Virus record (IMG/VR): IMGVR_UViG_3300020578_000006
Span: 1-64,000 of that record
Length of the DNA stretch: 64,000 nucleotides
Strand: one strand, 5' to 3'
The notes under the pieces were generated by a model. That model worked only from the letters and a program-made list of their open reading frames with translations, was not told the DNA's origin and did no database searches. The translations under genes were made by a program, and so were the position numbers. Shown piece after piece: positions 21,901-63,839 of this stretch. How positions within the stretch are numbered: position 1 is the stretch's first letter; every line of letters begins with the position of its first letter.

Positions 21901-21976
21901 TGCTATATGGCTCATTTATTATTTTTAGCAATAAATTACTTTAGAATTATTATATACTATTGACATAAATAATATT

Positions 21977-23569: not shown

Positions 23570-23640
23570 GGTTTGGGGTTATCCTTTTTTCTTTTATGAA
23601 AGAAAACCCCGCTTATTTTCGAATATGATACCGGGCATTT

Positions 23641-23731
23641 GGCCCGGTAGTTTAATGGTAAAACAGCAGACTTATACTCTGTATTATCGCCAGATTAGCG
23701 TAAAATGTAGGTTCGACTCCTACCCGGGCTA
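23641..23731 (+). tRNA. trnI: tRNA-Ile(UAU) with long variable arm
   Basis: GGCCCGG/CCGGGCU acceptor, GCAGA-CUUAUAC-UCUGU, 24-nt variable region with CGC/GCG stem, GUAGG-UUCGACU-CCUAC T-arm. Confidence 0.85.
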
Positions 23732-23735
23732 GTGT

Positions 23736-49314: not shown

Positions 49315-50253
49315 ATGAGCGTAGACTTAACCTTTTTTAAGTCAAATCCAAACAATATCTTAAGAGTCAAAAGAACAGGTTCATCAAGATCGCATGTAAT
49401 TATTGACTTTGTTAAGAATAACAAAAGCCTTCTTTCCGGAAAAGAATACAACGTTAAAGATTATGAAAGTATAATGTGTTATAGTGTAAGCCCTAATATA
49501 GATGAATTAAAATATTATTTAAAAAATAAAAAAAAGAACGACTATCTCGAACTTAATGATAAGCTCGATCACTTTTATATTGCACGTGCATTAAAACTAC
49601 CAATAGCAAAAATCTTGGAAAAAGATAAGGATAAAATAGTAAAAAGCTTTTATAAAATATACATTTCGTTTTTGAAGCAGTATTATGTAGAAGAGCAAGA
49701 TTTAAAGAGAATTAAAAAGACTGTTAGTAATATTAGTGATTTTTCCATATTACTTCAATATCTTCCGTATGACAGTGAATATAAGAATGGTAAGAAAAGA
49801 GTTATTGTATTAGACAGAATTCGCAAATGGCTTTATTCCTATTTTTACCCCGGTTGTCTTCCTTTTATTGAATTATATGATAAAGAGCTTATATGGGCGC
49901 AAAATATTATGCAAACACTTTTACCTTTAAATTTAGAGTATGCCTATCTTAATATAGGTAGTGGTATTAAATTTGATGAGGCTAAAGATATATGGAGAGG
50001 TCTTATTAGAAGCAAATACGAAACAGCTATTAAGCTTTTATCTGAAGAGGAAGCAGAAGCCAAGGAAATTGACGACCAGGAAACGATTTTAGAAATAAAT
50101 TTATTAAGAGAGAAGCTTAAGACTGTTGTTGAGGCTTTAAGGTTTGATTCAGTAAAAAGTATTCAAGAATTAATTATGTTTTGGCCAGAAGAGCTTTCAC
50201 CCGGGCCTCAAATTACTATTGACCCAGTTGGCCGGTCTTTAGTCTTTAGATAA
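49315..50253 (+). CDS. hypothetical helical protein, paralog of 61444..62313
   Basis: Shared C-terminus W..LI......L...E...I.E.I..WP..L.P. Confidence 0.75.
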   Translation: MSVDLTFFKSNPNNILRVKRTGSSRSHVIIDFVKNNKSLLSGKEYNVKDYESIMCYSVSPNIDELKYYLKNKKKNDYLELNDKLDHFYIARALKLPIAKILEKDKDKIVKSFYKIYISFLKQYYVEEQDLKRIKKTVSNISDFSILLQYLPYDSEYKNGKKRVIVLDRIRKWLYSYFYPGCLPFIELYDKELIWAQNIMQTLLPLNLEYAYLNIGSGIKFDEAKDIWRGLIRSKYETAIKLLSEEEAEAKEIDDQETILEINLLREKLKTVVEALRFDSVKSIQELIMFWPEELSPGPQITIDPVGRSLVFR

Positions 50254-51618
50254 ATAGCCCTTAATTATATTAATTAATCCTTCCAGCATAGTTTTATAAG
50301 GCTCAGGGTAAAACAATAAACACTTTAAATATTCGATAATTTTCTTTAATTCTTGCTTTGATAATGTTTCTATACAAAACTCAGGTATGAGTACATCATT
50401 AGTATGATTAATTTTTTCCATTGATAGACCATTCCATACATATTCTTCTTTACCGTTTTCATGAATCCCTTTAATTCGACTCCCCAGGGGGCCATGTACA
50501 GTATTAATATATAAACGTAATTTGTTTTTAACACAAAAATCGACTATTCTATGGGTTTCATAAATATTTTGAATTAGCGGGCAAAACAGAAGCGAATATA
50601 ATCTATTAAGCGAAAGCAATTTTTCTATATTTTTTTGTACCATGTTAAAATTACCATTTTTTCTAATAAAATTATAATTAGATTCTGTTAAAGAATCTAT
50701 AGATAGCAATATACCCATATTGGGAAGTTTTGCAAATAAATCTTCTATTCTTTTGTTTAAAATAGAACCATTTGTAGTTACAAGAACAGATATATTTGGA
50801 TTAATTTCTGCTATACTATCCCATATTTTATAATATAAAGGTGTTAAAAACGGCTCACCGCCTAGAAAATTTGTCGTTGTTAAATGAGGTATAAATTCTT
50901 TAAGTTGATTGACAAAAGCATCATCATAGGGTGATATTAGTTGTGGTAGTTTTTCCCTATTTTTTCTTATAGAAGATGACCACTTTCCACCACACATAAT
51001 GCATTCGTAATTACAAACTGTTCCAAATTCAAAATCCATATTTACCGGCATATCATTGTATATACTAGAACGCCATGAATTAAACTTCTTAATTAATATA
51101 TTTTTGTTTAATGCAAGAATGCCTTTATAACACAAATCACAGCCTTTTGTAAAATCTAACTTAGATAATGCAGCTATTAAATCTTTTCTCTCTGTGCTAT
51201 TCCACATTTCTTTTATAGTTTTGTTGGGGTAGCTACCTAAGACATGCTGTCTATTATAACAGCATACATTGACATTTCCTGTAGAATCAAAATTAAGCGA
51301 TGTATATGGTGCACAGCAAATAGGAGGCTCTCTATGTATAATGTTTTCTTCTTTTAACACTTGTATGTTGGTTAGTAGTTTTTCCCTTTCAGATTCTCTA
51401 TAGAGATTATCTATTGCTGTATCTACAAACTCCTTATAGCCATAAGTGTCACACAACCACACAACAGTCTCAATAGGATTATCCACCTCATCAAGACTAC
51501 CGTCGTGCGGGTTAATTCTTACCGACATTGCTTTAAATTGCTCTGTAGAAAAAGGTGCTTGTCTTTCTTGTTTTATTGCTAAAAACAAATCAATTATTTT
51601 TTCTGGAAATTTAGACAT
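50239..51618 (-). CDS. radical SAM protein with N-terminal SPASM/twitch-like domain
   Basis: CCAPY...GNVNVCC; CNYECIMC; GGEPFL; TTNG; SIDS. Confidence 0.9.
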   Translation of the reverse strand: MSKFPEKIIDLFLAIKQERQAPFSTEQFKAMSVRINPHDGSLDEVDNPIETVVWLCDTYGYKEFVDTAIDNLYRESEREKLLTNIQVLKEENIIHREPPICCAPYTSLNFDSTGNVNVCCYNRQHVLGSYPNKTIKEMWNSTERKDLIAALSKLDFTKGCDLCYKGILALNKNILIKKFNSWRSSIYNDMPVNMDFEFGTVCNYECIMCGGKWSSSIRKNREKLPQLISPYDDAFVNQLKEFIPHLTTTNFLGGEPFLTPLYYKIWDSIAEINPNISVLVTTNGSILNKRIEDLFAKLPNMGILLSIDSLTESNYNFIRKNGNFNMVQKNIEKLLSLNRLYSLLFCPLIQNIYETHRIVDFCVKNKLRLYINTVHGPLGSRIKGIHENGKEEYVWNGLSMEKINHTNDVLIPEFCIETLSKQELKKIIEYLKCLLFYPEPYKTMLEGLINIIKGYLSKD

Positions 51619-52432
51619 ATATCTTACTTTTTTCTACGTAACTATCAAAAATGTATTTTAGCTTGTTAATTATTAGTTTACTAGATGTTGCATTTTTTGT
51701 TATTTCATCCTTTACAAATTCTTCAAAACACTCTTCTGCTTTATCTGAATGCCACGGCTTAACAAAACCATGATATTGAATAATATGTGCATCTTTTAAG
51801 GATTGTACAGAGGCTATAGATGAAACCACATTATATTTTTGCGGAAGGTAGAATACATCACCGGCGAAACACACATTAAATACAGGCTGATCACTCGACC
51901 ATGATTTTTCGGATGCTAATTTTATTAAAGATTGCTTGTACTTAGGCTTTAAGAATTTTTTAGAAAATGACATTAAACCACAATTAAATCTTTTGCGATT
52001 TTGTTCTATTGGGCTGTTTGGCTCAATCTCAGGAATGCCTAAATATTTTTCACACGCAGAAAACAAATGTTTATCTTCCCATAGCTCCTTAATATCATTA
52101 AGAAATACCATATCACTATCAAATATAATAATACGATCATACCCTAAATTCCCCATCTCAAATACATCAAATCTGTAGTATAAATTATATCCCCATTTTT
52201 GGGTAGTAGGTAGGCACCCACTATAATCATTATTCTTAGCATTAATAACAATAATGTTTTTATAAATTTTTTTAAGTGTTAAAATATTTTTTTCTGATAA
52301 ACTACCATCTGATAACAATATTATATCACCATCGAACCATGGATTACTTTCTTTTAAACTAATCAAAAAAACTTTCATACTAAGCACAAAACTATCGTTA
52401 AGAGCCAATAACATAGCAATCTTTTTATTCAT
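51611..52432 (-). CDS. glycosyltransferase family 8
   Basis: YYRFDVF, DRIIIFDSDM, FNCGLM, DQPVFN, YNV, IIQYHG.VKPW. Confidence 0.9.
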   Translation of the reverse strand: MNKKIAMLLALNDSFVLSMKVFLISLKESNPWFDGDIILLSDGSLSEKNILTLKKIYKNIIVINAKNNDYSGCLPTTQKWGYNLYYRFDVFEMGNLGYDRIIIFDSDMVFLNDIKELWEDKHLFSACEKYLGIPEIEPNSPIEQNRKRFNCGLMSFSKKFLKPKYKQSLIKLASEKSWSSDQPVFNVCFAGDVFYLPQKYNVVSSIASVQSLKDAHIIQYHGFVKPWHSDKAEECFEEFVKDEITKNATSSKLIINKLKYIFDSYVEKSKIYV

Positions 52433-52471: not shown

Positions 52472-53356
52472 ATGCCTAAAATATCTATAGTAATGCCAGT
52501 TCGCAATAACGAACAGTATTTAGATGAATCAATACAGAGTATTCTAAATCAGACAGAAAAGGACTATGAATTTTTAATATTTGCCGATAGATGTAATGAA
52601 GTAACACTATTTAAACTCTCTCAATACAAAGACAGTAGAGTTAAAATCATTTCTAACCCTAGCATAAAGGGCATTACAGACTCGTTAAACTTTCTTATAT
52701 CTAATGCATCGTCTAATATAATAGCCAGACAGGATGCAGATGACATTTCTTCTTTAGATAGACTAAAAATATTTTTTGACGAAAATCAAAAAACTCATCT
52801 TACTACTAGTAATTTTTTTATTAAAGTAGACAATCAATTAACTTTACAAAAAAAATCTAATCTTCACGTTGTAAATTTGTTTAATTTTTTATTTTTCTAT
52901 AATTTTGGAGCCCATGGGCAGTTATTCTTTAATAAACAGTTTTATAATTCACAATTTAAATATTGTCAAGATTATGAACTCTGTAGTAGTATTTTAAGAG
53001 AGAATTTTAAAGATTTTTATTTGATTGAAAAACCGATCTATACGTATAGAAAGCATAACAATTCTATTTTTAATAATCACCGGTCAAAACAAGTTTATTT
53101 CTCTCTTTTAACATCTCAAGAAAATATTAGGCATTTTTTAGGCCTTAATCCACCTCTCTGTAAAGTAAAAGATATGCGTAACTTTTTCTTAGAACATAAG
53201 AAGCCTGTACATACTAGCGAGACACTCTTTTTATCGATGACAAAGACTATACTTGAAAGATTTAAAAGTCTTTTTTGTTCTTCTGATATAGAGAAAAATG
53301 CAGTAGACGAAACATATTACAAAGCCTATAATTCTACTTTTATTAAATCACAATAA
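52472..53356 (+). CDS. glycosyltransferase family 2
   Basis: ISIVMPVRN.EQYL.ESIQSIL.Q, IARQDADDIS, QDYEL. Confidence 0.9.
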   Translation: MPKISIVMPVRNNEQYLDESIQSILNQTEKDYEFLIFADRCNEVTLFKLSQYKDSRVKIISNPSIKGITDSLNFLISNASSNIIARQDADDISSLDRLKIFFDENQKTHLTTSNFFIKVDNQLTLQKKSNLHVVNLFNFLFFYNFGAHGQLFFNKQFYNSQFKYCQDYELCSSILRENFKDFYLIEKPIYTYRKHNNSIFNNHRSKQVYFSLLTSQENIRHFLGLNPPLCKVKDMRNFFLEHKKPVHTSETLFLSMTKTILERFKSLFCSSDIEKNAVDETYYKAYNSTFIKSQ

Positions 53357-54016: not shown

Positions 54017-54772
54017 ATGAGACCGCTAGTATTGATATTTACCTGTAAAAAATATATTTATAGGTGTAAAGATATACAAGAAACTTGGGGCCATGACCTT
54101 AAAAAAAATAATATAGATTACTTTTTTGTTAGTGGTGACAATCTCGATATAGAGCCATATCTAAATATAGATTTTAAAGAAAGCTATGAACAACTTCCAC
54201 AAAAAACATATATTACTTTTAATAGAGTAAAAGATTTAAATTATACCCACTTTATTAAGACAGATGACGATACATTTTTTAACGTTATTTCGTTTTTAAA
54301 AGAGCTAAACAGCTTATCAAATTTTGACTACATAGGTAAGTTTAACAAGCAAACTTCAGCTTCTTCAAAAATTCATTATTTTAAATGTAATGATTCTTTT
54401 AAAATTCCCAAACGTATATCTAAATTTTCTTATGCAGAGGGGGGTTTTTATATTTTAAGCAAAAAAGCACTAAACTATATTTGTGCTCAAAAAGAAAGTA
54501 CATTCGTCAATAAACCTACATCCTATAAGGGGGAGGATGTTTTAGTGGGTAGCATACTAAAGAATAAAGTAAAATCATTAGACATTAAAAATAACAACTC
54601 AGAAAAATTTAATATGGATCTAACTTTGTTCTCTCTTCACCCTGTAGATACTAGCATATTCAAACAGCTATACAAAAAAACCTTTAATTCTCAATTAAAA
54701 ATCTTACAACAAAATCAACTTCTAAACGAATATAATATTAGAGATAAATTCTTGGCAAATCTTAAACCTTGA
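54017..54772 (+). CDS. galactosyltransferase/fringe-like glycosyltransferase (GT31-like)
   Basis: ESYEQLPQKT, FIKTDDDTF, YAEGGFYILS, EDVLVG. Confidence 0.85.
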   Translation: MRPLVLIFTCKKYIYRCKDIQETWGHDLKKNNIDYFFVSGDNLDIEPYLNIDFKESYEQLPQKTYITFNRVKDLNYTHFIKTDDDTFFNVISFLKELNSLSNFDYIGKFNKQTSASSKIHYFKCNDSFKIPKRISKFSYAEGGFYILSKKALNYICAQKESTFVNKPTSYKGEDVLVGSILKNKVKSLDIKNNNSEKFNMDLTLFSLHPVDTSIFKQLYKKTFNSQLKILQQNQLLNEYNIRDKFLANLKP

Positions 54773-56150
54773 AAAAATCTTCCGGTAGCTTCTTACAAAA
54801 GCCTACTTTTTCATAAATTTCTTTACCCGCCGTATCCACGTCCACAAAAGGAAATTGCCGCTCTAACATATATTGTCTTTGAGGCTCTTTAAAATTATTG
54901 TATTTTGATTTATCTAGCCAAAGCGTTTCCTGCCATAACTTTTTATCGAGATAGGGATATCTTACCTCTATACCATGGACTCCACAGCAATACTCACAAG
55001 AATAAGGATTATTATCATCATAATCTATAACACCATTAATATCCTTAAGCCTTTTAAATAGCTTATTAATACCCTTAAAGCCAATGGCATCTCCACCTAA
55101 GCCGGATAAACAAATCTTATATCCTTCTTTTTTTGCTTTTAAAAAAATAAGACCGGCCCCTATAAACCCATAAGTCTCTCTACATACATATCCTACAAAT
55201 TTATTTTTATAAAAATCAAAGTGAGTATAGGCATAGTCCTCGACATTTTTAAAAATTTCATCTCGAGTAATCTCATGCATACTATCTGTAGGGTCGATAA
55301 GCTCTTTATTGACAATATTAGGTATTAAAATCTGTTTTCCTTCTATGATAGGTGGATTTTTAGTACTCAATCCATGGCGCCATAATAAAACATTAGACGG
55401 CTTTTCTAATACATTGACGGAATAAGCTTTAAAAGGAAGGTTATACTTTAACAGGGCGCTGCAAATAGCTCCGCTATCATACCCCTCACTAACACCCATA
55501 AAAATTTTTTTAGAAGCAGCAACAGTTCTTTTCAATATACTTTCATCAAACGCCATTTTCCAATCATCTAAATTAACTTTGTGTTCATTATCTAAATCAA
55601 AAGCTGTTATTTTATTTAATTTTATATTATCATTGCTTATATCGTATGTGTAATAATAATTTCCATATACGTGAAAAATTTCTTTATACCCTAATACAGA
55701 CAGTGCGCTCTTATATGAAGCTATACCTATTGTATTATTATGAATACTAAAAAATATAGGCTTAGTACCGAAAGTGTCAGAGCCAAAAATTAATTTCTTT
55801 TTTTTCTTATCTAACAAAACGATAGTAAATTCACCATCAAGATATTTAAAAAATTCTGCTCCATACTCTTCATATGCTTTGATTATACTTTCTCCATCTG
55901 ATAGACTATCAGGGGTAATGTCTTTATAATTATATATTTCACCATTGAAAACCATTATGATGTCACCACATTTAGAAATAAGTGGTTGAGGGGTCAAGTC
56001 TCCGGTAATACTTAGTAAATTATGTATAAAGTGAAAGCCGCTTTCGTTTTTATAAGAAGTTAAATCTGGTCCTCTAAATTTTTGATAGAAATTGGCGGCA
56101 TTTAAAACTTCTTCGGATGTATCTTTATTTGTGACCAAAAAACTACACAT
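54762..56150 (-). CDS. asparagine synthetase (glutamine-hydrolysing)-like amidotransferase
   Basis: N-terminal Cys2, RGPD, FNGEIYN, degenerate PP-loop SEGYDS, SGLGGD, EVRYPYLD; TATAAATA 4 nt upstream. Confidence 0.88.
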   Translation of the reverse strand: MCSFLVTNKDTSEEVLNAANFYQKFRGPDLTSYKNESGFHFIHNLLSITGDLTPQPLISKCGDIIMVFNGEIYNYKDITPDSLSDGESIIKAYEEYGAEFFKYLDGEFTIVLLDKKKKKLIFGSDTFGTKPIFFSIHNNTIGIASYKSALSVLGYKEIFHVYGNYYYTYDISNDNIKLNKITAFDLDNEHKVNLDDWKMAFDESILKRTVAASKKIFMGVSEGYDSGAICSALLKYNLPFKAYSVNVLEKPSNVLLWRHGLSTKNPPIIEGKQILIPNIVNKELIDPTDSMHEITRDEIFKNVEDYAYTHFDFYKNKFVGYVCRETYGFIGAGLIFLKAKKEGYKICLSGLGGDAIGFKGINKLFKRLKDINGVIDYDDNNPYSCEYCCGVHGIEVRYPYLDKKLWQETLWLDKSKYNNFKEPQRQYMLERQFPFVDVDTAGKEIYEKVGFCKKLPEDFFKV

Positions 56151-56200: not shown

Positions 56201-57355
56201 ATGCTTGATAAAAATTTATGTATTTTGCCATGGATTTCGCTTTATATAAGAGCGGACGGCAATATTTATCCCTGTGAAAGTGTAGCCTGGCAAGGAGACG
56301 ACTACTTACTTGGTAATCTAAACACAACAACACTAGAGGAAGCTTGGAACCACGATATGATGAAGAAGCTTCGGCTTAAAGTTATTACCAATTCTACATG
56401 CGAACTGTCTAATGAAGAGAAAAATTCTTGCATGTACCTTATAAATCATTCTCTTTATGAAGACGTATATAAAAATTACAAAAACGAAACAAAGTCAGAC
56501 GGAAGTTATAAAGTTGATATAAAAGCATTATTTTTAGAAAGATCCAATCTTTGTAATCTTCAATGTTTATATTGTTGTGATGTTAGTAGCTCTAGCTGGG
56601 AGCGAAAAAATAAAACCAATATAATGAAAATTAGTGATACTGTTTATGATTTAAAAGTGCTACCTATAACAAACAATCTTAGAGAATTATTTTTATCTGG
56701 CGGTGAACCGGTTATTAACAAATACAATAAAAAACTCTTACAACATTTAATTAACCATAATCCAAATATAGAATTAGGAATGGCAACGAATTTAACTTAT
56801 AATTTTGAACTATATGAAGAGTTTTTTAGTTTATTAGAAAAATTTAATAATACTAAAGTTTTTTGTAGTGTAGACAGCTCAGAAACTCGACACGATTTTA
56901 TTAGAATCAACTCAAATTGGAATACCGTAAAAACCAATTTAAATAAACTTAAAAACTATAAAGTAAGAATATATTTTAATAGTGTTATATCTTTATTAAG
57001 TGCTTTCTACTTAAAAGAATTTCACGAAACTTTAATTAATATGAAGATAATAGGCATTGACGGTATTCGATATATTAATTTGACTGGTCCAGAAGAACTT
57101 TGTATACAGTCGCTTTCGTTTAATAAGAAAAAAGAACTTAAAGAGTATCTTATTAGCTACATTAATTTTTTAAAAGAAAATGAAAATTTATCTAATAATA
57201 TAGATTTATATCCAAACAATAACAAGCCTTCTCAGGCTGCAGACAATATAATAAAATTTTTATTTAAAAAACTAGGTAATAATAATTATATAGACAATTT
57301 GTCTAAATTTGTATCTATAGATACTATTAAAAAACACTTTGACAGATTACTCTAA
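56201..57355 (+). CDS. radical SAM protein with N-terminal SPASM/twitch-like domain
   Basis: CILPW...GNIYPC; CNLQCLYC; GGEP; late promoter. Confidence 0.9.
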   Translation: MLDKNLCILPWISLYIRADGNIYPCESVAWQGDDYLLGNLNTTTLEEAWNHDMMKKLRLKVITNSTCELSNEEKNSCMYLINHSLYEDVYKNYKNETKSDGSYKVDIKALFLERSNLCNLQCLYCCDVSSSSWERKNKTNIMKISDTVYDLKVLPITNNLRELFLSGGEPVINKYNKKLLQHLINHNPNIELGMATNLTYNFELYEEFFSLLEKFNNTKVFCSVDSSETRHDFIRINSNWNTVKTNLNKLKNYKVRIYFNSVISLLSAFYLKEFHETLINMKIIGIDGIRYINLTGPEELCIQSLSFNKKKELKEYLISYINFLKENENLSNNIDLYPNNNKPSQAADNIIKFLFKKLGNNNYIDNLSKFVSIDTIKKHFDRLL

Positions 57356-57648: not shown

Positions 57649-58317
57649 ATGGTCAAAACTATGGTTATAGTTCCTCATGGAGATGATGAAATATTAGGCT
57701 TTTATGGGGCTATAAAAAGAAATTTAGAGCAGAACAATCATGTTAGTGTTGCGTTTATTATGGGGCCTAAGAACCTAACTAACGAAAGGAACACTCATCA
57801 ATTTCACACTATAGAAAAAGTTAAAGATAAGTTAGGTTATAACGAGGTGTTTTATCTAGATATTTTTAACGAACACAATATTCATTCAAATAAGCTCGAG
57901 CTCATCACAAGAATAGAAGAACTTGTATCTAATAATCATATAGATATCGTTTACACCACCCACTGGGGTGACAACCATCAAACACATAAATTATGCTATG
58001 AAGCGGTTGTTGCAGCCATAAGACCTATAGGGCCATGTAAAGCATCGAGACTAATTACAGGGGAGATTATATCCTCTACAGATCAAGCCCCGCAAACAGA
58101 AGCACATAGCTTTATCCCTAATATATTTTTGGAATTGTCCGAACAAGAAATAGAGGAAAAGATTAATCTTTTGAAAATGTATGAATATGAATATATGCAA
58201 ACCCCTCACCCTAGATCTGAGTGGGGGCTAAAAGCGGTAGCTAGCTTTAGAGGTATACAAGCAGGTGTTAAATACGCTGAAGGATATTTTTGTGCAAGAG
58301 AAATCATTAAAAAATAA
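57649..58317 (+). CDS. PIG-L/LmbE family N-acetyl-sugar deacetylase
   Basis: PHGDDEILG, DNHQTH, KINLLKMY..E...PHPRS...LA.FRG...G..YAE.F. Confidence 0.9.
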   Translation: MVKTMVIVPHGDDEILGFYGAIKRNLEQNNHVSVAFIMGPKNLTNERNTHQFHTIEKVKDKLGYNEVFYLDIFNEHNIHSNKLELITRIEELVSNNHIDIVYTTHWGDNHQTHKLCYEAVVAAIRPIGPCKASRLITGEIISSTDQAPQTEAHSFIPNIFLELSEQEIEEKINLLKMYEYEYMQTPHPRSEWGLKAVASFRGIQAGVKYAEGYFCAREIIKK

Positions 58318-59527
58318 CATAGAACAAATTGTAAATCAAAAGCATTTTTGTATTTTACCGTGGGTACATTTATATCATTTTACTGATAAAAAAGTATATC
58401 CATGCCCTGTTATGGGTGCATGGGGAGTCAACTCATTAGGCAACACTTCTGATGATATAGAAAAATTATGGAATAGTGAGCATCTTAAAGAGATAAGACG
58501 CAAGATGCTTAACAACGAAGCAATACCTTTTTGTAATAGAAACTGTAATGATTCTATAAACTCGTGCAAAAGACATTTTGGATTAGAGCTCATAGACAAG
58601 GCATCCTCAGCCATTCTAAATACCAAGCCTGATGGAAGTGTCGACCCTATAAACTTTATTGCGTGGAATATTATAGAATCAAACAAATGCAATTTTAAAT
58701 GTAGTTATTGCAATGTAAAATACTCTAATCGATTTGGTGAAAAATTAGAGACGTTCTCAGATACAGAGGCCATGAAGGATAAGATATTTCCATATCTTGA
58801 TAATATAGAAGAACTTTGGCTAGCATCTGGGGAGTCAGCCATACAAGACAGCTATTATGATATTCTAGAAGAACTTATTACAAGAAACCGTACAGATATA
58901 AGATTGTTTTTTATCACTAATATGAGTGTTGTAAATTATAAAGGTAGAAATATTTTTGAAATACTGAGCAAATTTAAAAATGCAGTAATATTTGGAAGTA
59001 TAGATGATAGGGAATCTAGACTTGAATACATAAGGTTTGGAAGTTCTTACAGTAAGATATTAGAAAATAGAATAGAGCTTTTAAAATATCCTAGTATTAA
59101 GTTTTACTTGCAACCTGTAATTAGTATATTTAATATTTTCTCTTTTCCAGATTTTCATAGAGATTGGTATAATCGAGGTCTTATAGGGGCTGACGAAGTA
59201 AGATATTATGTATTAGATTCTCCTTCATATCTTCAAGCCAACATTTTGCCTTTAAAATATAAAAACAAACTTTTAGAAAAATGGCGCGGCTATCAACAAT
59301 GGATAAAGGACAACTTAACTGATAAGGTAGATACATACCCTAACAGATGTAACCCCGTTAACTTTATTGACACACTTATAAACCATATAAGCGTACCAAA
59401 AGATAATTTAGAGCTACAGCATTTTTTTACTTTTATAGATGAAAATGATAAAAAGACCGGGCTTGCTTTTAATAATGTTTTTAATGAATATGGAGATATC
59501 AAATGCATTTCAAAGAAATATTTTTAA
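58265..59527 (+). CDS. radical SAM protein with N-terminal SPASM/twitch-like domain
   Basis: FCILPWVH...VYPC; CNFKCSYC; start uncertain. Confidence 0.88.
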   Translation: MLNTLKDIFVQEKSLKNNIEQIVNQKHFCILPWVHLYHFTDKKVYPCPVMGAWGVNSLGNTSDDIEKLWNSEHLKEIRRKMLNNEAIPFCNRNCNDSINSCKRHFGLELIDKASSAILNTKPDGSVDPINFIAWNIIESNKCNFKCSYCNVKYSNRFGEKLETFSDTEAMKDKIFPYLDNIEELWLASGESAIQDSYYDILEELITRNRTDIRLFFITNMSVVNYKGRNIFEILSKFKNAVIFGSIDDRESRLEYIRFGSSYSKILENRIELLKYPSIKFYLQPVISIFNIFSFPDFHRDWYNRGLIGADEVRYYVLDSPSYLQANILPLKYKNKLLEKWRGYQQWIKDNLTDKVDTYPNRCNPVNFIDTLINHISVPKDNLELQHFFTFIDENDKKTGLAFNNVFNEYGDIKCISKKYF

Positions 59528-60345
59528 ATTTTTATAATTCTTTACCCATACAAAAGTTTATTAAGAATATTAATAATATTGGTAGGGGGGTTAAAGATAT
59601 TAATCAAACAGGGTTTCCCTCTAAGCTTTCTACACTAATATCTTTTAACTTTAAAGAAAATAAATTACTAAATTTTAAGATCTATTGTGAAATATTTAGA
59701 AAATTTAAAAAGTACGAAATCTTAAAGTTCTTACCAACAGACAAAGACTTTAACTACTATTTTAGTTATTGGGACAACACCCTTTCATCTAGCCTTTGCT
59801 TTGGTATAAAAGTAGACAAAGACCATCTACCCACTCAATATTTTCATATTAAATTAAACCGTGTAATAAAAGAATTTACAGAGTGTAAAATTTATAAGGA
59901 AAGGCCAACTTTTAAGAGAACGGGCATTTCATTTGAGTATACTGGTTCTTCTGTTAAAAAGAAATACTATTTTTACTTTACGGAAAGTGATGACATAGAG
60001 TATTTTAAGCAAAAATATAATCTAACATTAGACGGGGGGTGTATTGATCATATAGAATTTACAGAATTTGATAACGGTGATCAAAAAATAATAGTAGTAT
60101 ATTCATATAAAAACGAGGCTGCTTACTCTAATATTCAAAAAACTTTTTTTCATCATACTTTAATTAAAGACTGTGTAGAATACTTTACCCAAGACCACGA
60201 CCTCTTACCTTGTTACTTCGGTGTCTATAAAAACAATACAATTGCACTGTATTGGAGCGTTACAGAAAAAGAATTAAAAAATGTAGTAAATATAGATCCG
60301 CTAGCCTTTAAAAATAAATTAGAAAAATTACTCGATAAAGTATGA
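59503..60345 (+). CDS. hypothetical protein in the rSAM-amidinotransferase operon
   Basis: 280 aa, aromatic beta-strand-rich, translationally coupled to both neighbours. Confidence 0.75.
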   Translation: MHFKEIFLNFYNSLPIQKFIKNINNIGRGVKDINQTGFPSKLSTLISFNFKENKLLNFKIYCEIFRKFKKYEILKFLPTDKDFNYYFSYWDNTLSSSLCFGIKVDKDHLPTQYFHIKLNRVIKEFTECKIYKERPTFKRTGISFEYTGSSVKKKYYFYFTESDDIEYFKQKYNLTLDGGCIDHIEFTEFDNGDQKIIVVYSYKNEAAYSNIQKTFFHHTLIKDCVEYFTQDHDLLPCYFGVYKNNTIALYWSVTEKELKNVVNIDPLAFKNKLEKLLDKV

Positions 60346-61436
60346 AATGTGTTAATAGCTATAATGAATGGGATCCTTTAGAGGAGATTATTGTTGGTAA
60401 TGGATTTCCAGCAGATCTTCCTTCAGATGATCTGGGGTTTAAATTCTTTTTTCATGATAATCTTTTAGGACCAGATGGCGCATTATATGCAGGAAGATGG
60501 TATTTAGAAAAGAGATATATTGAAGAATTAAGAGAGGATTTAGAGTCATTTGTCAATATTTTAAAACAAAGAAATATTACTGTAAGAAGGCCTAAGGAAC
60601 CTGCAGGACCTCATGAAGTGAAAACGCTTTGTTGGTCATCAAGCAACTATCCTGCTCTCAATGTTCGAGATCTTACACTAGTAGTAGGTAATGAAATAAT
60701 AGAAACATCTGTATTGGCACGGTGGCGTCAATTTGAAAACGATTATCTTAAGCATTTATTCTTAGACTACTTTAAGAGAGGGGCTAAATGGACGGCTGCC
60801 CCAAGGCCCTTAAGTACTGATAAGTCTATAGATTATTCTAGAGTAGAGCAAACACCAGAAATAAAAAAGTATTATGATACTCTTAAACAACAAGAACATA
60901 GTAATCTAGATTGTGGGGTAGAGATAATGTTTGATGCAGCAAATTGTATTAGAATGGGCAACACAATAATGTTTAACGCGCCAACTGAACATGAGAGATT
61001 GGGCGCAGAGTGGCTACAGAGACATCTAGGTAAAAAATATAAAGTATGGACCGTTAATATATTTGATAACCATATAGATTCTTTATTTCTTCCTATTCGC
61101 CCGGGGTTAGCAATCTTAACCCTCCCCATAAAGCACAAATTGCCTGAGCCACTAAGAAAATGGGATATTGTCTATGTTCCTTCTTTACTAGAGCCGCACA
61201 AAACCCCTGATTATATGCCTATTGCATCAGAGAAAATATTTTGTAACCTGCTCTCTCTTTCACCGAACGAAGTCATATGTCAGCCAGAATATTATGATAT
61301 TTTATCTAAAAGGCTAAAACCATTTAAAGTAGAGGTAACACCAAACAGATTAAGACATAGTCGATTATTTGGTGGAGGACATCATTGTCTCACACTGGAT
61401 ATAAGAAGAAAGGGCAAATTAGAAAATTATTTCTAA
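60342..61436 (+). CDS. L-arginine-dependent amidinotransferase (AGAT/StrB1 family)
   Basis: NSYNEWDPLEEIIVG, NVRDL, MFDAAN (Asp), NHIDS (His), GGGHHCLTLDIRR (Cys) catalytic triad. Confidence 0.92.
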   Translation: MKCVNSYNEWDPLEEIIVGNGFPADLPSDDLGFKFFFHDNLLGPDGALYAGRWYLEKRYIEELREDLESFVNILKQRNITVRRPKEPAGPHEVKTLCWSSSNYPALNVRDLTLVVGNEIIETSVLARWRQFENDYLKHLFLDYFKRGAKWTAAPRPLSTDKSIDYSRVEQTPEIKKYYDTLKQQEHSNLDCGVEIMFDAANCIRMGNTIMFNAPTEHERLGAEWLQRHLGKKYKVWTVNIFDNHIDSLFLPIRPGLAILTLPIKHKLPEPLRKWDIVYVPSLLEPHKTPDYMPIASEKIFCNLLSLSPNEVICQPEYYDILSKRLKPFKVEVTPNRLRHSRLFGGGHHCLTLDIRRKGKLENYF

Positions 61437-61443: not shown

Positions 61444-62313
61444 ATGCTCTACAAGTTGGCACAAAAACTATCCTTAAGGGGAATTATTATAAAAATTAGT
61501 TTTATTAATAATGGTATTGCTATCTTTAGAACTGTTTGTAATAGTAAGCATGCAGACTTATTTGGGTTGAAAGGTTCAGATTCTGAATTTACAGATATTA
61601 TTACAGAGCAGCCCGTAGAGTTCGATGAAAACTCTGTTACATGTCTAGAGTATCTTTATGTTCCTAAGCATATTTTTTTAGATGATTTTGAAAAAAATAC
61701 CGAATATACAAATTTATTTGGGGAAGATTTTCTTATAAAGAGTAAACATTATATCGAAACTACAACTAAAAAAATTCAAGAAGAGCGGGCCAGATTTATA
61801 ATGTACTCTTCCGAACAACTAGAACCTTGCAACCGATTTTCTAATGATTTGCTAGATGATTATTATTATATGAAGTTTTACCCTGAAAAGCGAGATAATA
61901 TTTCAAGAGAAATTGTTTATGATAAAATTAAAGAAGATATTATTAAAAAGTACTTTCTTATTAAGGATTCTGATAATAGAAAAATAAAAGGAGCTTTTAG
62001 AAGGCTTGGTATTACAAACGCTGCAGAGCAAATAAACGATCCAGATTATATTAATGCGTTTAAGAATATATGGTATAGCCTTATAGAAGAACAAAAAGAA
62101 GAGCAACTCTTACAGTTGGATACGGCCAAACAAAATATTCTAAAAGCCGAGGGTGTTGATAAAGAGGATTTTTTACAGCAATGTGATATACTTGAATTAA
62201 TGATCAAACAAATAGATAAAACTGTTCTATTAGGTTGTAATTCTATCAGTGAAATTATTAAAACCTGGCCCAGCTATCTTCAACCTGAACCATATTACAT
62301 AGACAATGAGTGA
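61444..62313 (+). CDS. hypothetical helical protein, paralog of 49315..50253
   Basis: Shared C-terminal WP..L.P region. Confidence 0.75.
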   Translation: MLYKLAQKLSLRGIIIKISFINNGIAIFRTVCNSKHADLFGLKGSDSEFTDIITEQPVEFDENSVTCLEYLYVPKHIFLDDFEKNTEYTNLFGEDFLIKSKHYIETTTKKIQEERARFIMYSSEQLEPCNRFSNDLLDDYYYMKFYPEKRDNISREIVYDKIKEDIIKKYFLIKDSDNRKIKGAFRRLGITNAAEQINDPDYINAFKNIWYSLIEEQKEEQLLQLDTAKQNILKAEGVDKEDFLQQCDILELMIKQIDKTVLLGCNSISEIIKTWPSYLQPEPYYIDNE

Positions 62314-63052
62314 AACAATTAACTTCTTCTGGTTAGGAGACAAGCTTGGATTATTAGAGCAGCTATCATTGAAGTCATTTTTAGACCATGGACATAAAAC
62401 AATTCTATGGGCTTACAATATCAAATGCCACGGGGTGCCTTCAGGTGTCATTGTTAATAATGCTAATGAAATACTTTCCGAAGATCGAATATTTAAATAT
62501 ACCGGTAACGGCGATTGTCGTGTAAATAGTATCGGTGGGTTTTCTGACTTATTTAGATATTATCTTTTGAATAAAGTTGGCGGGTGGTATTGTGATATGG
62601 ATGTTACCTGTCTAGCCCCTTTCAATAATATTAATCAGGAGTATGTTATAAGACCTCATAAAAATACTAAAATTGTTGGTAATATCCTTAAGACCCCTAA
62701 CAATAATAGTTTTCTAGAAGATTGTATAGCTGAAACCGAAAGACTTGTCGATAAGGATAACGATAGATGGATTAAACCATTAGAGATATTAAGAGATTGC
62801 GTATACAAGCACGGTATTGATAAGTTTATTGTTCAAAAAGATTGGTTTGGTAATGATGATATTGAGGAGATAAGAAAAATGTTAAACATAGGAGTATTCA
62901 CCAAATATATTAATTTACCTAAGTATGCTATTCATTGGTGTAATGAGGCAATTTCTACTGGTCGCTGGGACTATTCTATAAAGCGAGATTTTAATAAACC
63001 ATTGCCTACTACTCTATTTTATAACCTATTAAAAAAACATGAACTCTTGTAA
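62306..63052 (+). CDS. glycosyltransferase, GT32 alpha-1,4-transferase-like
   Basis: FFWLG..L..LEQLSLKSF, FSDLFRY, GGWYCDMDV. Confidence 0.88.
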   Translation: MSETINFFWLGDKLGLLEQLSLKSFLDHGHKTILWAYNIKCHGVPSGVIVNNANEILSEDRIFKYTGNGDCRVNSIGGFSDLFRYYLLNKVGGWYCDMDVTCLAPFNNINQEYVIRPHKNTKIVGNILKTPNNNSFLEDCIAETERLVDKDNDRWIKPLEILRDCVYKHGIDKFIVQKDWFGNDDIEEIRKMLNIGVFTKYINLPKYAIHWCNEAISTGRWDYSIKRDFNKPLPTTLFYNLLKKHELL

Positions 63053-63839
63053 TATAGCGTTTGTAACTACGTTAAGCGATGATTTTTTGCCTGGAGCGGT
63101 TGCAGCAATTAAAAGCCTCATTAAAAATACCCCTACATTTAGCTACCCTATAATAATCTTAGAGTGGGGAGGCTTATCTGATTATAATAAAAGCTTACTT
63201 AAGAAAATATATAAAAATATTTCTTTTAAACATGTAGACTCTAATAACTACCCTGAGTATCAATCCGGTGAAAATAGAGTTTGGAATTATAATTTTAACT
63301 ATAGATATGATATATTTTTACTCGATAAATTTGATAGGATAATTTTCTTTGATTCTGATATAATTTTTAATATAGATATATCCAAATTGGCTAAGATAAA
63401 ATGTAATTTTGGTGCTGTTCCAAGGTCTAGAGGGACTAATGTTCAGATAGGAAAAAGACCGGGGTTTAATGCCGGCTTAATGATTATTGGGAAGAAGTTT
63501 TTAAATAAAGAAACCCGGGATAGTTTAATAAAGCTTTCTAAGCAGCCAGCTATTTTGGATATCCGTGTAAAAAAACAATTATGGATAGGAAATGAGCCCA
63601 TTCTAAACAATTTCTTTAAAACATTTACCAAATTACCAAAAAAATATAACTTGTGTATAGATGATATAAAGCCAAAAATTAATTTACTAGACTATAATAT
63701 ACATTATATTGGTAAACGTAAGCCGTGGAATAATTCTATAGATAGTTACGCCACTAACAAATTAGCATCAAAATACGGACAGTTCTTTGCAGTTCTTACG
63801 TCTAAAAAGCTTGTTAATTTATATAAAAAGTATACTTAA
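63039..63839 (+). CDS. glycosyltransferase family 8
   Basis: YRYDIF, DRIIFFDSDI, FNAGLM, YNL, IHYIGKRKPW. Confidence 0.88.
   Translation: MNSCNIAFVTTLSDDFLPGAVAAIKSLIKNTPTFSYPIIILEWGGLSDYNKSLLKKIYKNISFKHVDSNNYPEYQSGENRVWNYNFNYRYDIFLLDKFDRIIFFDSDIIFNIDISKLAKIKCNFGAVPRSRGTNVQIGKRPGFNAGLMIIGKKFLNKETRDSLIKLSKQPAILDIRVKKQLWIGNEPILNNFFKTFTKLPKKYNLCIDDIKPKINLLDYNIHYIGKRKPWNNSIDSYATNKLASKYGQFFAVLTSKKLVNLYKKYT

What the first reader, a model, noticed from the sequence alone, without database searches (positions are those of the whole stretch)
60342..61436. Intact amidinotransferase in a phage genome
Seen: full-length, with Asp/His/Cys triad motifs. Known: the family transfers the amidino group of arginine to glycine (AGAT, CyrA), inosamine phosphate (StrB1), lysine (AmtA) or peptide N-termini, mostly in secondary metabolism. 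Inference: a rarely noted viral function whose acceptor defines the whole cluster.
Basis: partly seen in the sequence, partly recalled or inferred. Interest (0 to 1): 0.75.

Follow-up and report, generated by a model that had tools for sequence, protein, structure and literature searches.

The report
Phage amidinotransferase in a glycan island
A large freshwater T4-like phage carries an intact, selectively maintained arginine-type amidinotransferase from a virus-dominated, uncharacterised branch of the family, sitting in a sugar-building gene island, where it most likely converts a de-acetylated amino sugar into a guanidino sugar.

Summary
ORF 60342-61436 (+, 364 aa) is a full-length amidinotransferase: E 1e-42 to 1e-47 to StrB1, AGAT, SxtG and HsvA, with every catalytic residue present. 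It lies in a complete 229.7-kb T4-like phage genome found in at least 22 lake metagenomes. Its GC and GC3 match the genome, and it is under strong purifying selection (25 synonymous and 4 non-synonymous SNPs).

It belongs to none of the four subfamilies represented by a solved structure (StrB1, AGAT, SxtG, HsvA). It falls in a well-supported clade made of viral contigs and close metagenome sequences. The best named cellular genome is only 44% identical. The loop that gives AGAT and CyrA their glycine specificity is deleted.

Across 32 viral loci, 29 also carry a PIG-L deacetylase. Most also carry an SDR dehydratase, a DegT-like protein, an RmlD-like reductase, GT8 glycosyltransferases and radical SAM enzymes. 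Only 27 of 80 viral PIG-L loci carry the amidinotransferase.

The best reading is a decorating enzyme that amidinates an amino sugar in a phage-made glycan. This is inferred, not shown. In this phage's sublineage the gene is translationally coupled to an ABBA prenyltransferase-fold protein.

Phage amidinotransferases were noted in 2010 and 2025, but none has been characterised.

The parts
60342..61436 (+). Amidinotransferase (364 aa), the finding itself. Catalytic triad C349/H244/D198, guanidino-binding D110/D246, and S296.
   Evidence: Purifying selection is shown.
59503..60345 (+). ABBA (PT-barrel) prenyltransferase-fold protein, 280 aa. Its stop overlaps the amidinotransferase start (ATGA).
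   Evidence: No Pfam hit. Atlas features score 0.93 to PTase_Orf2/DUF5838/Trp_DMAT clusters. The AF2 model has pLDDT 78.5 and five alpha-alpha-beta-beta repeats. All top-50 Foldseek PDB hits are ABBA prenyltransferases, including PirF, PagF, LimF, DciF and KgpF, with E 2e-7 to 2e-4. Invariant K/Y/H/E residues lie on the strands.
57649..58317 (+). PIG-L/LmbE-type de-N-acetylase (222 aa), the most constant partner of the amidinotransferase.
   Evidence: Pfam PF02585 at 9.8e-14. The H10-x-D12-D13 motif and H113 are invariant. Present in 29 of 32 viral amidinotransferase loci.
58265..59527 (+). N-terminal-twitch radical SAM protein. The exact start is uncertain: GTG at 58265 or a later ATG at 58412.
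   Evidence: NCBIfam NF033640 at 2.2e-71; Pfam Radical_SAM plus SPASM.
56201..57355 (+). N-terminal-twitch radical SAM protein (second paralogue).
   Evidence: NF033640 at 3.2e-58.
50239..51618 (-). N-terminal-twitch radical SAM protein (third paralogue).
   Evidence: NF033640 at 7.4e-45, just below its cut-off. Pfam Radical_SAM plus SPASM.
54762..56150 (-). Asparagine-synthase-like glutamine amidotransferase (462 aa).
   Evidence: Pfam GATase_7 at 4e-20 and a weak Asn_synthase match. TIGR01536 at 6e-35, below its cut-off.
54017..54772 (+). GT31 (Galactosyl_T/Fringe-like) glycosyltransferase.
52472..53356 (+). GT2 glycosyltransferase (EpsE/TuaG-like).
51611..52432 (-). GT8 glycosyltransferase.
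61444..62313 (+). Orphan ORF (289 aa) with no detectable relatives, evolving fast.
   Evidence: No family hit. Atlas model pLDDT 0.48. 7 of 11 listed SNPs are non-synonymous.
62306..63052 (+). GT32-like (Gly_transf_sug, DXD) glycosyltransferase.
63039..63839 (+). GT8 glycosyltransferase. The island continues past the window end with an NDP-sugar-dehydrogenase-like gene at genome 64024-64797.
47774..48517 (+). Tail-fibre piece with an S74 intramolecular chaperone domain, marking the upstream border of the island.
   Evidence: Pfam PF13884 at 6.6e-12. Relatives show the same arrangement.

Best explanation
The ORF encodes an active amidinotransferase.

Mechanism, by homology to AGAT and StrB1 (inferred from conserved residues, not shown): the amidino group of a guanidino donor is taken onto Cys349. 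The donor is presumably L-arginine, which would release ornithine. His244 and Asp198 assist, and Asp110 and Asp246 hold the guanidinium. The group is then passed to a primary amine on the acceptor.

Family placement (shown): the enzyme belongs to a deep, uncharacterised branch of the family carried mainly by aquatic T4-like myoviruses.

Location (shown): it sits in a roughly 15-17 kb hypervariable island between tail-fibre genes. The island holds five glycosyltransferases in the window, a PIG-L de-N-acetylase, three radical SAM enzymes, an AsnB-like amidotransferase and, just past the window end, an NDP-sugar-dehydrogenase-like gene.

Acceptor (inferred): an amino sugar. In this phage it would be a hexosamine whose amine is unmasked from HexNAc by the PIG-L enzyme. 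In most relatives it would be a 6-deoxy or 4-amino sugar made by the adjacent SDR, DegT-like and RmlD-like enzymes. The product would be a cationic guanidino sugar in a phage-made glycan.

Destination (the most speculative step): either virion proteins such as the neighbouring fibres, or the infected cell's envelope.
For: Enzyme competence:
- Full-length matches to four solved amidinotransferases.
- All six catalytic or binding residues are invariant across 28 relatives.
- Atlas structural TM is 0.87-0.91.
- Of 29 listed strain SNPs, 25 are synonymous and 4 are not, giving pN/pS of about 0.04.

Not a glycine enzyme:
- The segment before the catalytic His is 3-4 residues shorter than in the AGAT/SxtG-type clade.
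- It reads D-x-H-I-D-S instead of P-M-H-I-D, so the positions of AGAT N300 and M302 are absent.

Separate clade:
- All 29 viral-contig enzymes plus close metagenome hits form one clade (FastTree support 99; IQ-TREE SH-aLRT 98). No named cellular genome lies inside it.
- The AGAT-like and SxtG-like representatives lie across the deepest split.
- The best of 185,579 species genomes is 44% identical.

Sugar context in 32 viral loci:
- PIG-L in 29, GT8-like in 29, SDR 4,6-dehydratase/epimerase in 24, rSAM-SPASM in 24, DegT-like in 23, RmlD-like in 20.
- The typical gene order is SDR, PIG-L, DegT, RmlD, amidinotransferase, GT8, GT32.
- The same picture appears on TARA, ENA and NCBI contigs.

Direction of the dependence:
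- 29 of 32 amidinotransferase loci have PIG-L, but only 27 of 80 viral PIG-L loci have the amidinotransferase. This is what is expected if PIG-L makes the amine and the transferase is an optional downstream step.

Recurrence beyond this clade:
- This phage keeps the amidinotransferase and PIG-L while lacking SDR, DegT and RmlD.
- A Myxococcales MAG has amidinotransferase, PIG-L and radical SAM in a row.
- Campylobacter phage CP220 and cyanophage S-SCSM2R also place an amidinotransferase among radical SAM and glycosyltransferase genes.
Against: - No biochemical data exist for any member of this branch.
- No guanidino sugar turned up in a full-text literature search, and I know of none in a natural glycan.
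- AGAT Arg322 binds the amino-acid carboxylate of the donor (from memory of Humm et al. 1997). It aligns with a variable position (K264), so even the donor is not secure.
- PIG-L is absent near the amidinotransferases of CP220 and S-SCSM2R.
- The radical SAM/SPASM enzymes and the ABBA-fold neighbour are typical of peptide maturation, not sugar chemistry.
- A distant amidinotransferase (ORF266) was found in the S-SCSM2R virion proteome. This fits a protein substrate as well as a glycan on a protein.
- The 32 loci are related phages, so the co-occurrence counts are not independent events.
Confidence: 0.5

Rival explanations
1. Protein- or peptide-directed amidination. The enzyme would convert lysine or ornithine side chains, or an N-terminus, of a virion protein or a small peptide into guanidino groups. 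It would act within a RiPP-like toolkit of radical SAM/SPASM enzymes and an ABBA prenyltransferase, with the glycosyltransferases acting on the same protein.
For: - The gene is translationally coupled to an ABBA-fold protein. The best structural matches of that protein are peptide prenyltransferases, including the arginine bis-prenyltransferase DciF.
- There are three twitch/SPASM radical SAM genes.
- Asp/Arg hydroxylase genes occur in relatives.
- The island lies between tail-fibre genes.
- A distant amidinotransferase and a 2OG oxygenase were detected in S-SCSM2R virions.
Against: - In at least 19 of 29 viral loci the enzyme sits inside an SDR, PIG-L, DegT, RmlD nucleotide-sugar block.
- The ABBA-like gene is confined to one sublineage (7 loci) and also occurs without the amidinotransferase.
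- No precursor-peptide-like gene was identified.
- N-twitch radical SAM proteins have no demonstrated peptide substrate.
Confidence: 0.2
2. Small-molecule pathway. The island would make an aminoglycoside- or aminocyclitol-like metabolite (StrB1 logic), or the enzyme would amidinate polyamines as HsvA does, for example putrescine to agmatine. The product would serve DNA packaging or competition with other microbes.
For: - The gene set (glycosyltransferase, PIG-L deacetylase, twitch radical SAM, DegT, amidinotransferase) mirrors the aminoglycoside enzyme repertoire (own knowledge). One review is the only paper holding all four terms.
- StrB1 is the top PDB hit, narrowly.
- The S-SCSM2R authors call their genes 'antibiotic synthesis genes'.
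- An alphaproteobacterial relative lies in a PPTase/FAD-oxidase secondary-metabolism context.
Against: - No inositol-phosphate or 2-deoxy-scyllo-inosose synthase, and no sugar or inosamine kinase, was detected among the ORFs scanned in this island.
- Five glycosyltransferases in the window argue for an oligo- or polysaccharide.
- Bit scores to StrB1, AGAT, SxtG and HsvA are nearly equal (148-165), so there is no specific affinity to StrB1 or HsvA.
- No polyamine genes are adjacent.
Confidence: 0.15
3. A true L-arginine:glycine amidinotransferase that makes guanidinoacetate as an auxiliary metabolic gene, as the automatic JGI label and the 'creatine pathway' reading of ocean viral genes would suggest.
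For: JGI names many relatives 'glycine amidinotransferase'. A viral guanidinoacetate methyltransferase enrichment has been reported in ocean viromes (PMC11360552).
Against: - The specificity flap is deleted (AGAT N300/M302; CyrA F245/S247 as I recall them from Muenchhoff et al. 2012, which the review read cites by title only).
- Arg322 is not conserved.
- The enzyme lies across the deepest split of the tree from the AGAT/SxtG clade.
- No methyltransferase partner is adjacent. The context is wholly glycan-related.
Confidence: 0.05
4. DNA hypermodification. The glycosyltransferases and the amidinotransferase would decorate a modified base in phage DNA.
For: Virus-encoded glycosyltransferases are known to hypermodify DNA (Pyle et al. 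2024, cited in PMC12619734). A dCMP deaminase gene lies nearby at 47316-47750.
Against: - The complete genome has no thymidylate-synthase/dCMP-hydroxymethylase family gene.
- No Tet/JBP hit was found, although that search's positive control did not ring.
- The glycosyltransferase families present (GT8, GT2, GT31, GT32) are those of LPS, capsule and protein glycosylation.
Confidence: 0.05

Closest known systems
StrB1, L-arginine:inosamine-phosphate amidinotransferase of Streptomyces griseus (PDB 1BWD)
   Same: Best PDB match (3.6e-47, residues 4-363 against 4-346). Same Cys-His-Asp triad and Asp pair. A shortened loop before the catalytic His, which in StrB1 gives an open site for a bulky cyclitol phosphate (the last point is from memory of Fritsche et al. 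1998).
   Different: Matches over about 88% of aligned positions, with a score no better than to AGAT or SxtG. StrB1 lacks the roughly 17-residue segment that the phage enzyme shares with AGAT (residues about 165-190). No streptidine-pathway genes are nearby. An SxtG-like representative scores 256 bits to StrB1, against 165 for the phage enzyme.
AGAT (PDB 1JDW) and cyanobacterial CyrA, L-arginine:glycine amidinotransferases
   Same: Full-length homology (2e-45). Identical catalytic residues D170, D254, H303, D305, S355 and C407.
   Different: The 300-flap (N300, M302) is deleted. Arg322 is not conserved. The motif is HHC instead of FHC at the catalytic Cys. The two lie on opposite sides of the deepest split in the tree.
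SxtG (PDB 6U1R) and HsvA (PDB 5WPI), amidinotransferases acting on an amino-ketone and on polyamines
   Same: Comparable similarity (3.8e-45 and 5e-42). They show that the fold accepts diverse cationic primary amines (review PMC12371840).
   Different: They belong to the classical clade: representative P0149 scores 453 bits to SxtG against 158 for the query. Their gene context is toxin or virulence biosynthesis, not glycan biosynthesis.
Radical-SAM plus amidinotransferase module of Campylobacter phages CP220 and CPt10 (Timms et al. 2010, PMC2853527)
   Same: A T4-like myovirus with an amidinotransferase (30% identity, 9e-41) flanked by several radical SAM genes and two nucleotide-sugar transferases. 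It shares the D-x-H-x-D motif and belongs to the same half of the tree. Its function is likewise unknown.
   Different: A different subclade, sister to Bacteriovoracaceae sequences. No PIG-L, SDR or DegT genes are nearby. It carries more radical SAM genes (five in the module).
Synechococcus phage S-SCSM2R ORF309 'inosamine amidinotransferase' and ORF266 'glycine amidinotransferase' (PMC12801897)
   Same: A cultured T4-like cyanophage. ORF309 (29% identity) lies among glycosyltransferases, a radical SAM gene and a short DegT-like gene that is 45% identical to the one in this clade's islands. ORF266 sits beside KdsA and KdsB, as the enzyme does on a TARA contig.
   Different: ORF309 falls in a third clade of the tree. 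ORF266 is a 297-aa distant relative alignable only over its C-terminal half. The authors interpret the genes as antibiotic synthesis genes.
Acetamidino sugars such as FucNAm or Pse5Am, made by WbpG/LfnA/PseA-type amidotransferases (own knowledge)
   Same: An analogous outcome: a permanently cationic amidine-type group on N-2 or N-5 of a surface sugar.
   Different: Different chemistry and enzymes. Acetamidino groups come from amidation of an N-acetyl carbonyl. Here the N-acetyl group would be removed by PIG-L and a guanidino group built by amidino transfer.

Membership tests
Amidinotransferase family (pentein superfamily; AGAT/StrB1 type) | Full-length sequence homology to characterised members | tested here: met
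   E 3.6e-47 to 5e-42 over residues 4-363 against StrB1, AGAT, SxtG and HsvA. phrog_25854 at 6.5e-33. Pfam and NCBIfam models give no hit.
Amidinotransferase family (pentein superfamily; AGAT/StrB1 type) | Catalytic Cys-His-Asp triad (AGAT C407, H303, D254) | tested here: met
   C349, H244 and D198 are aligned and invariant in 28 relatives.
Amidinotransferase family (pentein superfamily; AGAT/StrB1 type) | Guanidinium-binding Asp pair and substrate Ser (AGAT D170, D305, S355) | tested here: met
   D110, D246 and S296 are invariant.
Amidinotransferase family (pentein superfamily; AGAT/StrB1 type) | Pentein fold | tested here: met
   Atlas structure comparison gives TM 0.87-0.91 to inosamine-phosphate and AGAT-type clusters. 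The AF2 model has pLDDT 79 and pTM 0.83. A Foldseek PDB search of my own model could not be run.
Amidinotransferase family (pentein superfamily; AGAT/StrB1 type) | Arginine-dependent amidino transfer with ornithine release | not testable with these tools
   Needs an enzyme assay.
Amidinotransferase family (pentein superfamily; AGAT/StrB1 type) | Donor carboxylate-binding Arg (AGAT R322) | tested here: inconclusive
   It aligns with K264 in a variable, gap-rich loop and is not conserved in the viral clade. The alignment there is unreliable.
L-arginine:glycine amidinotransferase (AGAT/CyrA) | Specificity flap before the catalytic His (AGAT N300/M302; P-M-H-I-D motif) | tested here: not met
   The segment is 3-4 residues shorter and reads D-x-H-I-D-S.
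L-arginine:glycine amidinotransferase (AGAT/CyrA) | Clusters with AGAT/CyrA/SxtG sequences in a family tree | tested here: not met
   The AGAT-like (P0267) and SxtG-like (P0149) anchors lie across the deepest, 99-supported split from the viral clade.
Inosamine-phosphate amidinotransferase (StrB1) | Specific sequence affinity to StrB1 and a streptidine or aminocyclitol gene context | tested here: not met
   The score to StrB1 (165 bits) is about the same as to AGAT (159) and SxtG (158). No cyclitol synthase or kinase was detected among the neighbours scanned.
ABBA (PT-barrel) prenyltransferases, for the neighbour ORF 59503-60345 | Ten-stranded antiparallel barrel of five alpha-alpha-beta-beta repeats | tested here: met
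   AF2 secondary-structure order. All 50 best Foldseek PDB hits are ABBA prenyltransferases, probability 1.00, TM about 0.45-0.56. Atlas features score 0.93.
ABBA (PT-barrel) prenyltransferases, for the neighbour ORF 59503-60345 | Sequence-level homology and prenyl-diphosphate binding or prenyl transfer | tested here: inconclusive
   No Pfam hit. A profile search against PDB gave only a spurious VPS34 hit. Invariant K59, Y61, K103, H115, K117, Y156, Y158, K195, Y242 and Y250 lie on strands with i/i+2 spacing, as expected for a diphosphate-binding barrel lining. Activity is untested.

The most novel reading that the evidence does not exclude
The phage builds a glycan, or modifies a virion protein, bearing a guanidino group that is made de novo. 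PIG-L de-acetylation followed by amidino transfer would give a guanidino sugar, a residue I know of in no natural glycan. It would be almost isobaric with HexNAc (amidino +42.022 Da against acetyl +42.011 Da), so it could easily be overlooked. In this sublineage the translationally coupled ABBA-fold enzyme would then N-prenylate that guanidine, as cyanobactin arginine prenyltransferases do. The result would be a lipidated cationic decoration on tail fibres that affects adsorption or evasion of host defences.
Probability: 0.1. Interest if true: 0.85.

Novelty: new variant of a known kind. Interest (0 to 1): 0.55.

Why it matters
The branch of the amidinotransferase family that includes this viral clade has no characterised member. 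It is widespread in aquatic T4-like phages from lakes and oceans.

If the acceptor is an amino sugar, this would add a new cationic sugar modification to glycobiology. It would also give a function to the radical-SAM, amidinotransferase and glycosyltransferase modules that have stood unexplained in Campylobacter phages since 2010 and were recently read as 'antibiotic genes' in a cyanophage.

It would also correct the automatic label 'glycine amidinotransferase', which feeds 'creatine pathway' readings of viral auxiliary metabolic genes.

In practical terms, phage-made surface glycans bear on adsorption, host range and immune recognition of virions.

Tried and rejected
- Pfam and NCBIfam scans of the ORF, even at E 10, gave nothing. 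The family models do not reach this branch.
- A megablast of the 9-kb island against 50,697 phage records found no match.
- psbA, ThyA/gp42-family and Tet/JBP searches of the whole genome were negative. The Tet/JBP control did not ring, so that negative is weak.
- The promoter and terminator scan was no better than shuffled sequence.
- No RNA sequencing run was listed, so there is no expression evidence.
The Atlas structure comparison was used instead.
- I tried to obtain a background set of amidinotransferase-less islands using GT8 or rSAM-SPASM alignments. Both failed for lack of conserved stretches. I therefore could not measure the base rate of PIG-L in comparable islands without the enzyme. 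I have only the reverse count (27 of 80).
- A profile of the ABBA-like family against PDB sequences gave only a spurious VPS34 hit.
- Named anchor sequences (StrB1, AGAT and others) could not be put into the tree directly. Anchoring was done indirectly, by scoring tree representatives against PDB. StrB1 and HsvA themselves are therefore not placed.
- Host-derived contamination was considered and rejected, on GC/GC3, flanking phage genes and recurrence.
- A pseudogene or inactive enzyme was considered and rejected, on invariant catalytic residues and pN/pS of about 0.04.
Full report
**Observation.** The window holds an ATG-initiated ORF at 60342-61436 on the + strand, 364 aa. Its start overlaps the stop of the upstream ORF in an ATGA junction.

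phmmer against all PDB chains gives seven end-to-end matches and nothing else below E 0.2:
- StrB1 (1bwd): 3.6e-47
- AGAT (1jdw family): about 1e-45
- SxtG (6u1r): 3.8e-45
- HsvA (5wpi): 5e-42

I mapped the printed alignments onto human AGAT numbering, using the chain offset of +37. This was checked on H303 and D305. The mapping gives D110 = D170, D198 = D254, H244 = H303, D246 = D305, S296 = S355 and C349 = C407. All six residues are invariant in an alignment of 28 relatives of 46-74% identity.

The Atlas model of this exact sequence superposes on inosamine-phosphate and AGAT-type clusters with TM 0.87-0.91. My own AF2 model has pLDDT 79.

Pfam and NCBIfam have no model that reaches it. PHROGs has one family of unknown function.

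**Is it really viral and maintained?** The evidence is as follows.
- The window is the first 64 kb of a 229,717-bp IMG/VR record that CheckV rates complete.
- A T4-type portal, tail-sheath stabiliser and tail fibres lie upstream. A tail-collar fibre, class I RNR and baseplate hub lie downstream. There are 8 tRNA genes.
- The portal is at most 32% identical to that of any cultured phage, and there is no psbA. This is a distant T4-like lineage with an unknown host.
- The gene's GC (0.357) and GC3 (0.25) equal the genome's GC (0.353) and the GC3 of RNR (0.25).
- The same locus is present at 100% identity on three other IMG/VR contigs. It is also present in at least 22 lake-water metagenome runs from 2018 and two freshwater runs from 2025.
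- Contigs of a roughly 97% identical strain, from the 2025 runs, give 29 listed SNPs in the gene: 25 synonymous and 4 non-synonymous. With 229 synonymous and 863 non-synonymous sites, pN/pS is about 0.04. Only the best-supported SNPs were listed.
- By contrast, the downstream orphan ORF has 7 of 11 SNPs non-synonymous.

**Place in the family.** The large protein collection holds 1,677 relatives at E <= 1e-10 among word-sharing candidates. The closest are 89% and 74% identical, followed by a continuum from 65% down to 46% among the 120 best hits listed.

Two peptide patterns recovered 32 IMG/VR loci of 43-100% identity. One genome from each of 185,579 prokaryote species gave only 21 loci, at 33-44% identity. 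These were Myxococcales and 'delta' MAGs, Bacteriovoracaceae, an alphaproteobacterial MAG, Eremiobacterota, and Streptomyces and relatives.

In a 180-row FastTree, all viral-contig sequences and their close metagenome relatives form one clade with support 99. An 84-row IQ-TREE gives the clade SH-aLRT 98. No named cellular genome lies inside it.

The metagenome members I inspected all sit in phage contexts, with S74 fibres, Gp10-like baseplate or PhoH nearby. One of these is filed at NCBI as 'bacterium'.

To anchor the tree, I scored representatives against PDB:
- P0149 is SxtG-like (453 bits) and P0267 is AGAT-like (296 bits). Both lie on the other side of the deepest, 99-supported split.
- The Streptomyces group and the CP220 group, like the query, score only 130-165 bits to their best PDB amidinotransferases, StrB1 and HsvA, and less to the rest.

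The phage enzyme thus belongs to a large branch with no characterised member. That branch is marked by D-x-H-[ILV]-D-[SG] before the catalytic His. The classical clade has P-M-H-[IL]-D there, and the phage segment is 3-4 residues shorter. The shortened segment removes the positions of AGAT N300 and M302. As I recall from Muenchhoff et al. 2012, the equivalent positions in CyrA control glycine specificity; the review read cites that paper only by its title.

AGAT Arg322 aligns with a variable Lys in a poorly alignable loop, so the donor-binding mode is not secured.

**Gene context.** I called ORFs in 32 viral loci (10 kb either side), clustered them by all-against-all BLASTP, and named the common clusters with Pfam. 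The number of loci with each partner was:

| Partner | Loci (of 32) |
|---|---|
| PIG-L de-N-acetylase | 29 |
| GT8-like transferase | 29 |
| SDR 4,6-dehydratase/epimerase | 24 |
| 300-aa rSAM-SPASM | 24 |
| Short (about 207 aa) DegT-like protein | 23 |
| RmlD-like reductase | 20 |
| A second GT8 | 19 |
| GT32-like transferase | 13 |
| Class I/II aminotransferase | 12 |

The common gene order is unknown-180 aa, SDR, PIG-L, DegT, RmlD, amidinotransferase, GT8, GT32. It is usually placed just after tail-fibre genes that carry an S74 chaperone.

The reverse search, with a PIG-L alignment, returned 80 viral loci, of which only 27 hold an amidinotransferase. The dependence is therefore one-directional. 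The amidinotransferase almost always has PIG-L, but PIG-L often lacks the amidinotransferase. That pattern is expected if PIG-L produces the amine and the transferase is an optional later step.

The PIG-L proteins keep the H-x-D-D and downstream His metal-binding motifs.

Outside this clade, similar combinations recur:
- A Myxococcales MAG has amidinotransferase, PIG-L and radical SAM in a row beside a transposase.
- Bacteriovoracaceae contigs flank the gene with N-twitch radical SAM genes.
- Campylobacter phage CP220 has four radical SAM genes, then the amidinotransferase, another radical SAM gene, and two glycosyltransferases.
- Cyanophage S-SCSM2R has glycosyltransferases, a short DegT-like gene (45% identical to the one in these islands), a radical SAM gene, a 2OG oxygenase, the amidinotransferase and a GT2.

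**This phage's own version of the island** differs from the common layout. From about 49.3 kb to the window end, and on to about 64.8 kb of the genome, it holds:
- three N-terminal-twitch radical SAM paralogues (NF033640);
- GT8, GT2, GT31, GT32-like and GT8 transferases;
- an AsnB-like glutamine amidotransferase;
- PIG-L;
- the amidinotransferase;
- a truncated NDP-sugar-dehydrogenase-like gene.

It lacks the SDR, DegT and RmlD genes. With its six closest relatives (58-74% identity) it instead has a 240-280-aa gene beside the amidinotransferase, immediately upstream of it in four of the seven loci and a few genes away in the rest.

That protein has no Pfam hit. Its Atlas features match aromatic prenyltransferase clusters (score 0.93). 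The AF2 model (pLDDT 78.5) shows five alpha-alpha-beta-beta repeats. All 50 best Foldseek PDB hits are ABBA prenyltransferases. They are led by the cyanobactin enzymes PirF, PagF, LimF and KgpF and the arginine bis-prenyltransferase DciF.

Its invariant Lys, Tyr, His and Glu residues sit on the strands with i/i+2 spacing. The family is tiny, with 21 proteins in 5.8 billion. It also occurs in islands without the amidinotransferase.

The amidinotransferases of this sublineage differ from the main viral group at motifs next to active-site residues. After S296 they read AS-EKI[FY]CN, against AS-PRIELN. At the catalytic Cys they read RLFGGGHHCL, against E[IL]FxGAHHCT. These differences track the change of neighbours. 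This suggests a change of acceptor, but it is a single evolutionary event, not independent evidence.

**Interpretation.**
- Shown: the enzyme is intact and conserved, belongs to a virus-dominated clade, is embedded in a glycan island, and is linked to PIG-L.
- Inferred by homology: a ping-pong amidino transfer through Cys349 from a guanidino donor, presumably arginine.
- Inferred from context: the acceptor is an amino sugar whose amine is unmasked by PIG-L. In relatives the amine may be made on a 6-deoxy or 4-amino sugar. The product would be a guanidino sugar in a phage-made glycan.
- Speculative: that the glycan ends up on fibres or other virion proteins, or on the host envelope.

A guanidino-hexose residue would differ from HexNAc by only 0.011 Da (amidino CH2N2 42.0218 against acetyl C2H2O 42.0106, my own arithmetic). 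It could therefore have been missed in routine glycan mass spectrometry. A full-text search found no natural 'guanidino sugar'.

**Rivals.**
- A protein- or peptide-directed reading is kept alive by the SPASM/twitch radical SAM genes, the peptide-prenyltransferase-like neighbour, Asp/Arg hydroxylases in relatives, and the finding of a distant amidinotransferase and a 2OG oxygenase in S-SCSM2R virions.
- A small-molecule reading (aminoglycoside-like, or polyamine as for HsvA) fits the enzyme repertoire. However, no cyclitol synthase or kinase was detected, and the number of glycosyltransferases argues against it.
- A glycine enzyme is contradicted by the missing flap and by the tree.
- DNA hypermodification is disfavoured because the complete genome has no ThyA/gp42-family gene. 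The Tet/JBP negative is weak.

**Novelty.** The fold and chemistry are known. Phage copies were remarked on in 2010 (PMC2853527) and 2025 (PMC12801897), and are auto-annotated by JGI.

The new findings here are:
- this clade is virus-dominated and sits in a branch with no characterised member;
- it lacks the glycine-specificity flap;
- it shows a consistent, one-directional linkage to a de-N-acetylase and nucleotide-sugar genes;
- in this sublineage it is coupled to an ABBA-fold protein.

I rate it a new variant of a known kind, of moderate interest.

Noticed in passing
window 59503-60345 (+): An ABBA/PT-barrel prenyltransferase-fold protein in a phage, with no Pfam hit. It belongs to a family of only 21 proteins in the 5.8-billion-protein collection, all in similar phage glycan islands. 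The strain variant carries an in-frame 3-nt insertion after 59830.
   Followed up: yes
window 50239-51618 (-), 56201-57355 (+), 58265-59527 (+): Three paralogous N-terminal-twitch radical SAM genes (NF033640) lie in one island. The same family flanks amidinotransferases on Bacteriovoracaceae MAG contigs (L042, L043). No substrate is known for it.
   Followed up: partly
window 26054-29566 (-): A 1170-aa protein with 22% glycine and repeated GGGGGGMDMGGGGGGGG blocks. It accounts for the local GC peak (0.45 against 0.35) and matches phrog_2295. It is probably a polyglycine-rich fibre or adhesin protein.
   Followed up: partly
window 61444-62313 (+): An orphan 289-aa ORF directly after the amidinotransferase. 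It has no relatives in any library and a low-confidence fold. 7 of 11 listed strain SNPs are non-synonymous, against 4 of 29 in the amidinotransferase.
   Followed up: partly
window 7195-7426, 14333-14406, 21300-21901, 23640-23732: Eight tRNA genes: Glu, Met x2, Leu, Arg, Thr, Gln, and Ile with anticodon TAT. The Ile gene is unusually long at 93 nt.
   Followed up: no
L005 2024-2797 (genome 64024-64797); relatives L029 8573-9196: Two truncated enzymes recur in these islands. One is an NDP-sugar dehydrogenase of 257 aa covering only profile positions 75-298 of 413. The other is a DegT-like protein of about 207 aa where about 360 aa would be expected. Either they work as fragments or partners, or they have new roles.
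   Followed up: no
L015 (IMGVR_UViG_GVMAG-M-3300009149-7_000001) and L065 (GCA_002687235.1, NYZN01000034.1): An 11-kb contig binned as a giant-virus MAG, and an 11.7-kb contig of a MAG filed as 'bacterium', both carry the phage-type island. The second also carries PhoH. Both are probably mis-binned phage contigs.
   Followed up: partly
L063 17354-18247 (S-SCSM2R ORF266): A second, much more distant and shorter (297 aa) pentein labelled 'glycine amidinotransferase'. It sits beside KdsA and KdsB and 2OG oxygenases, and was reported in the virion proteome. Only its C-terminal half aligns with the query.
   Followed up: partly
L064 3836-4993: An IS605 OrfB/TnpB (Cas12f-like) gene sits among the tail-fibre genes of a related 150-kb phage contig, next to the glycan island.
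   Followed up: no
window 47316-47750 (+) and 44890-45492 (-): A dCMP deaminase and an NADPH-dependent FMN reductase-like gene lie just upstream of the island. The genome has no ThyA-family gene.
   Followed up: no
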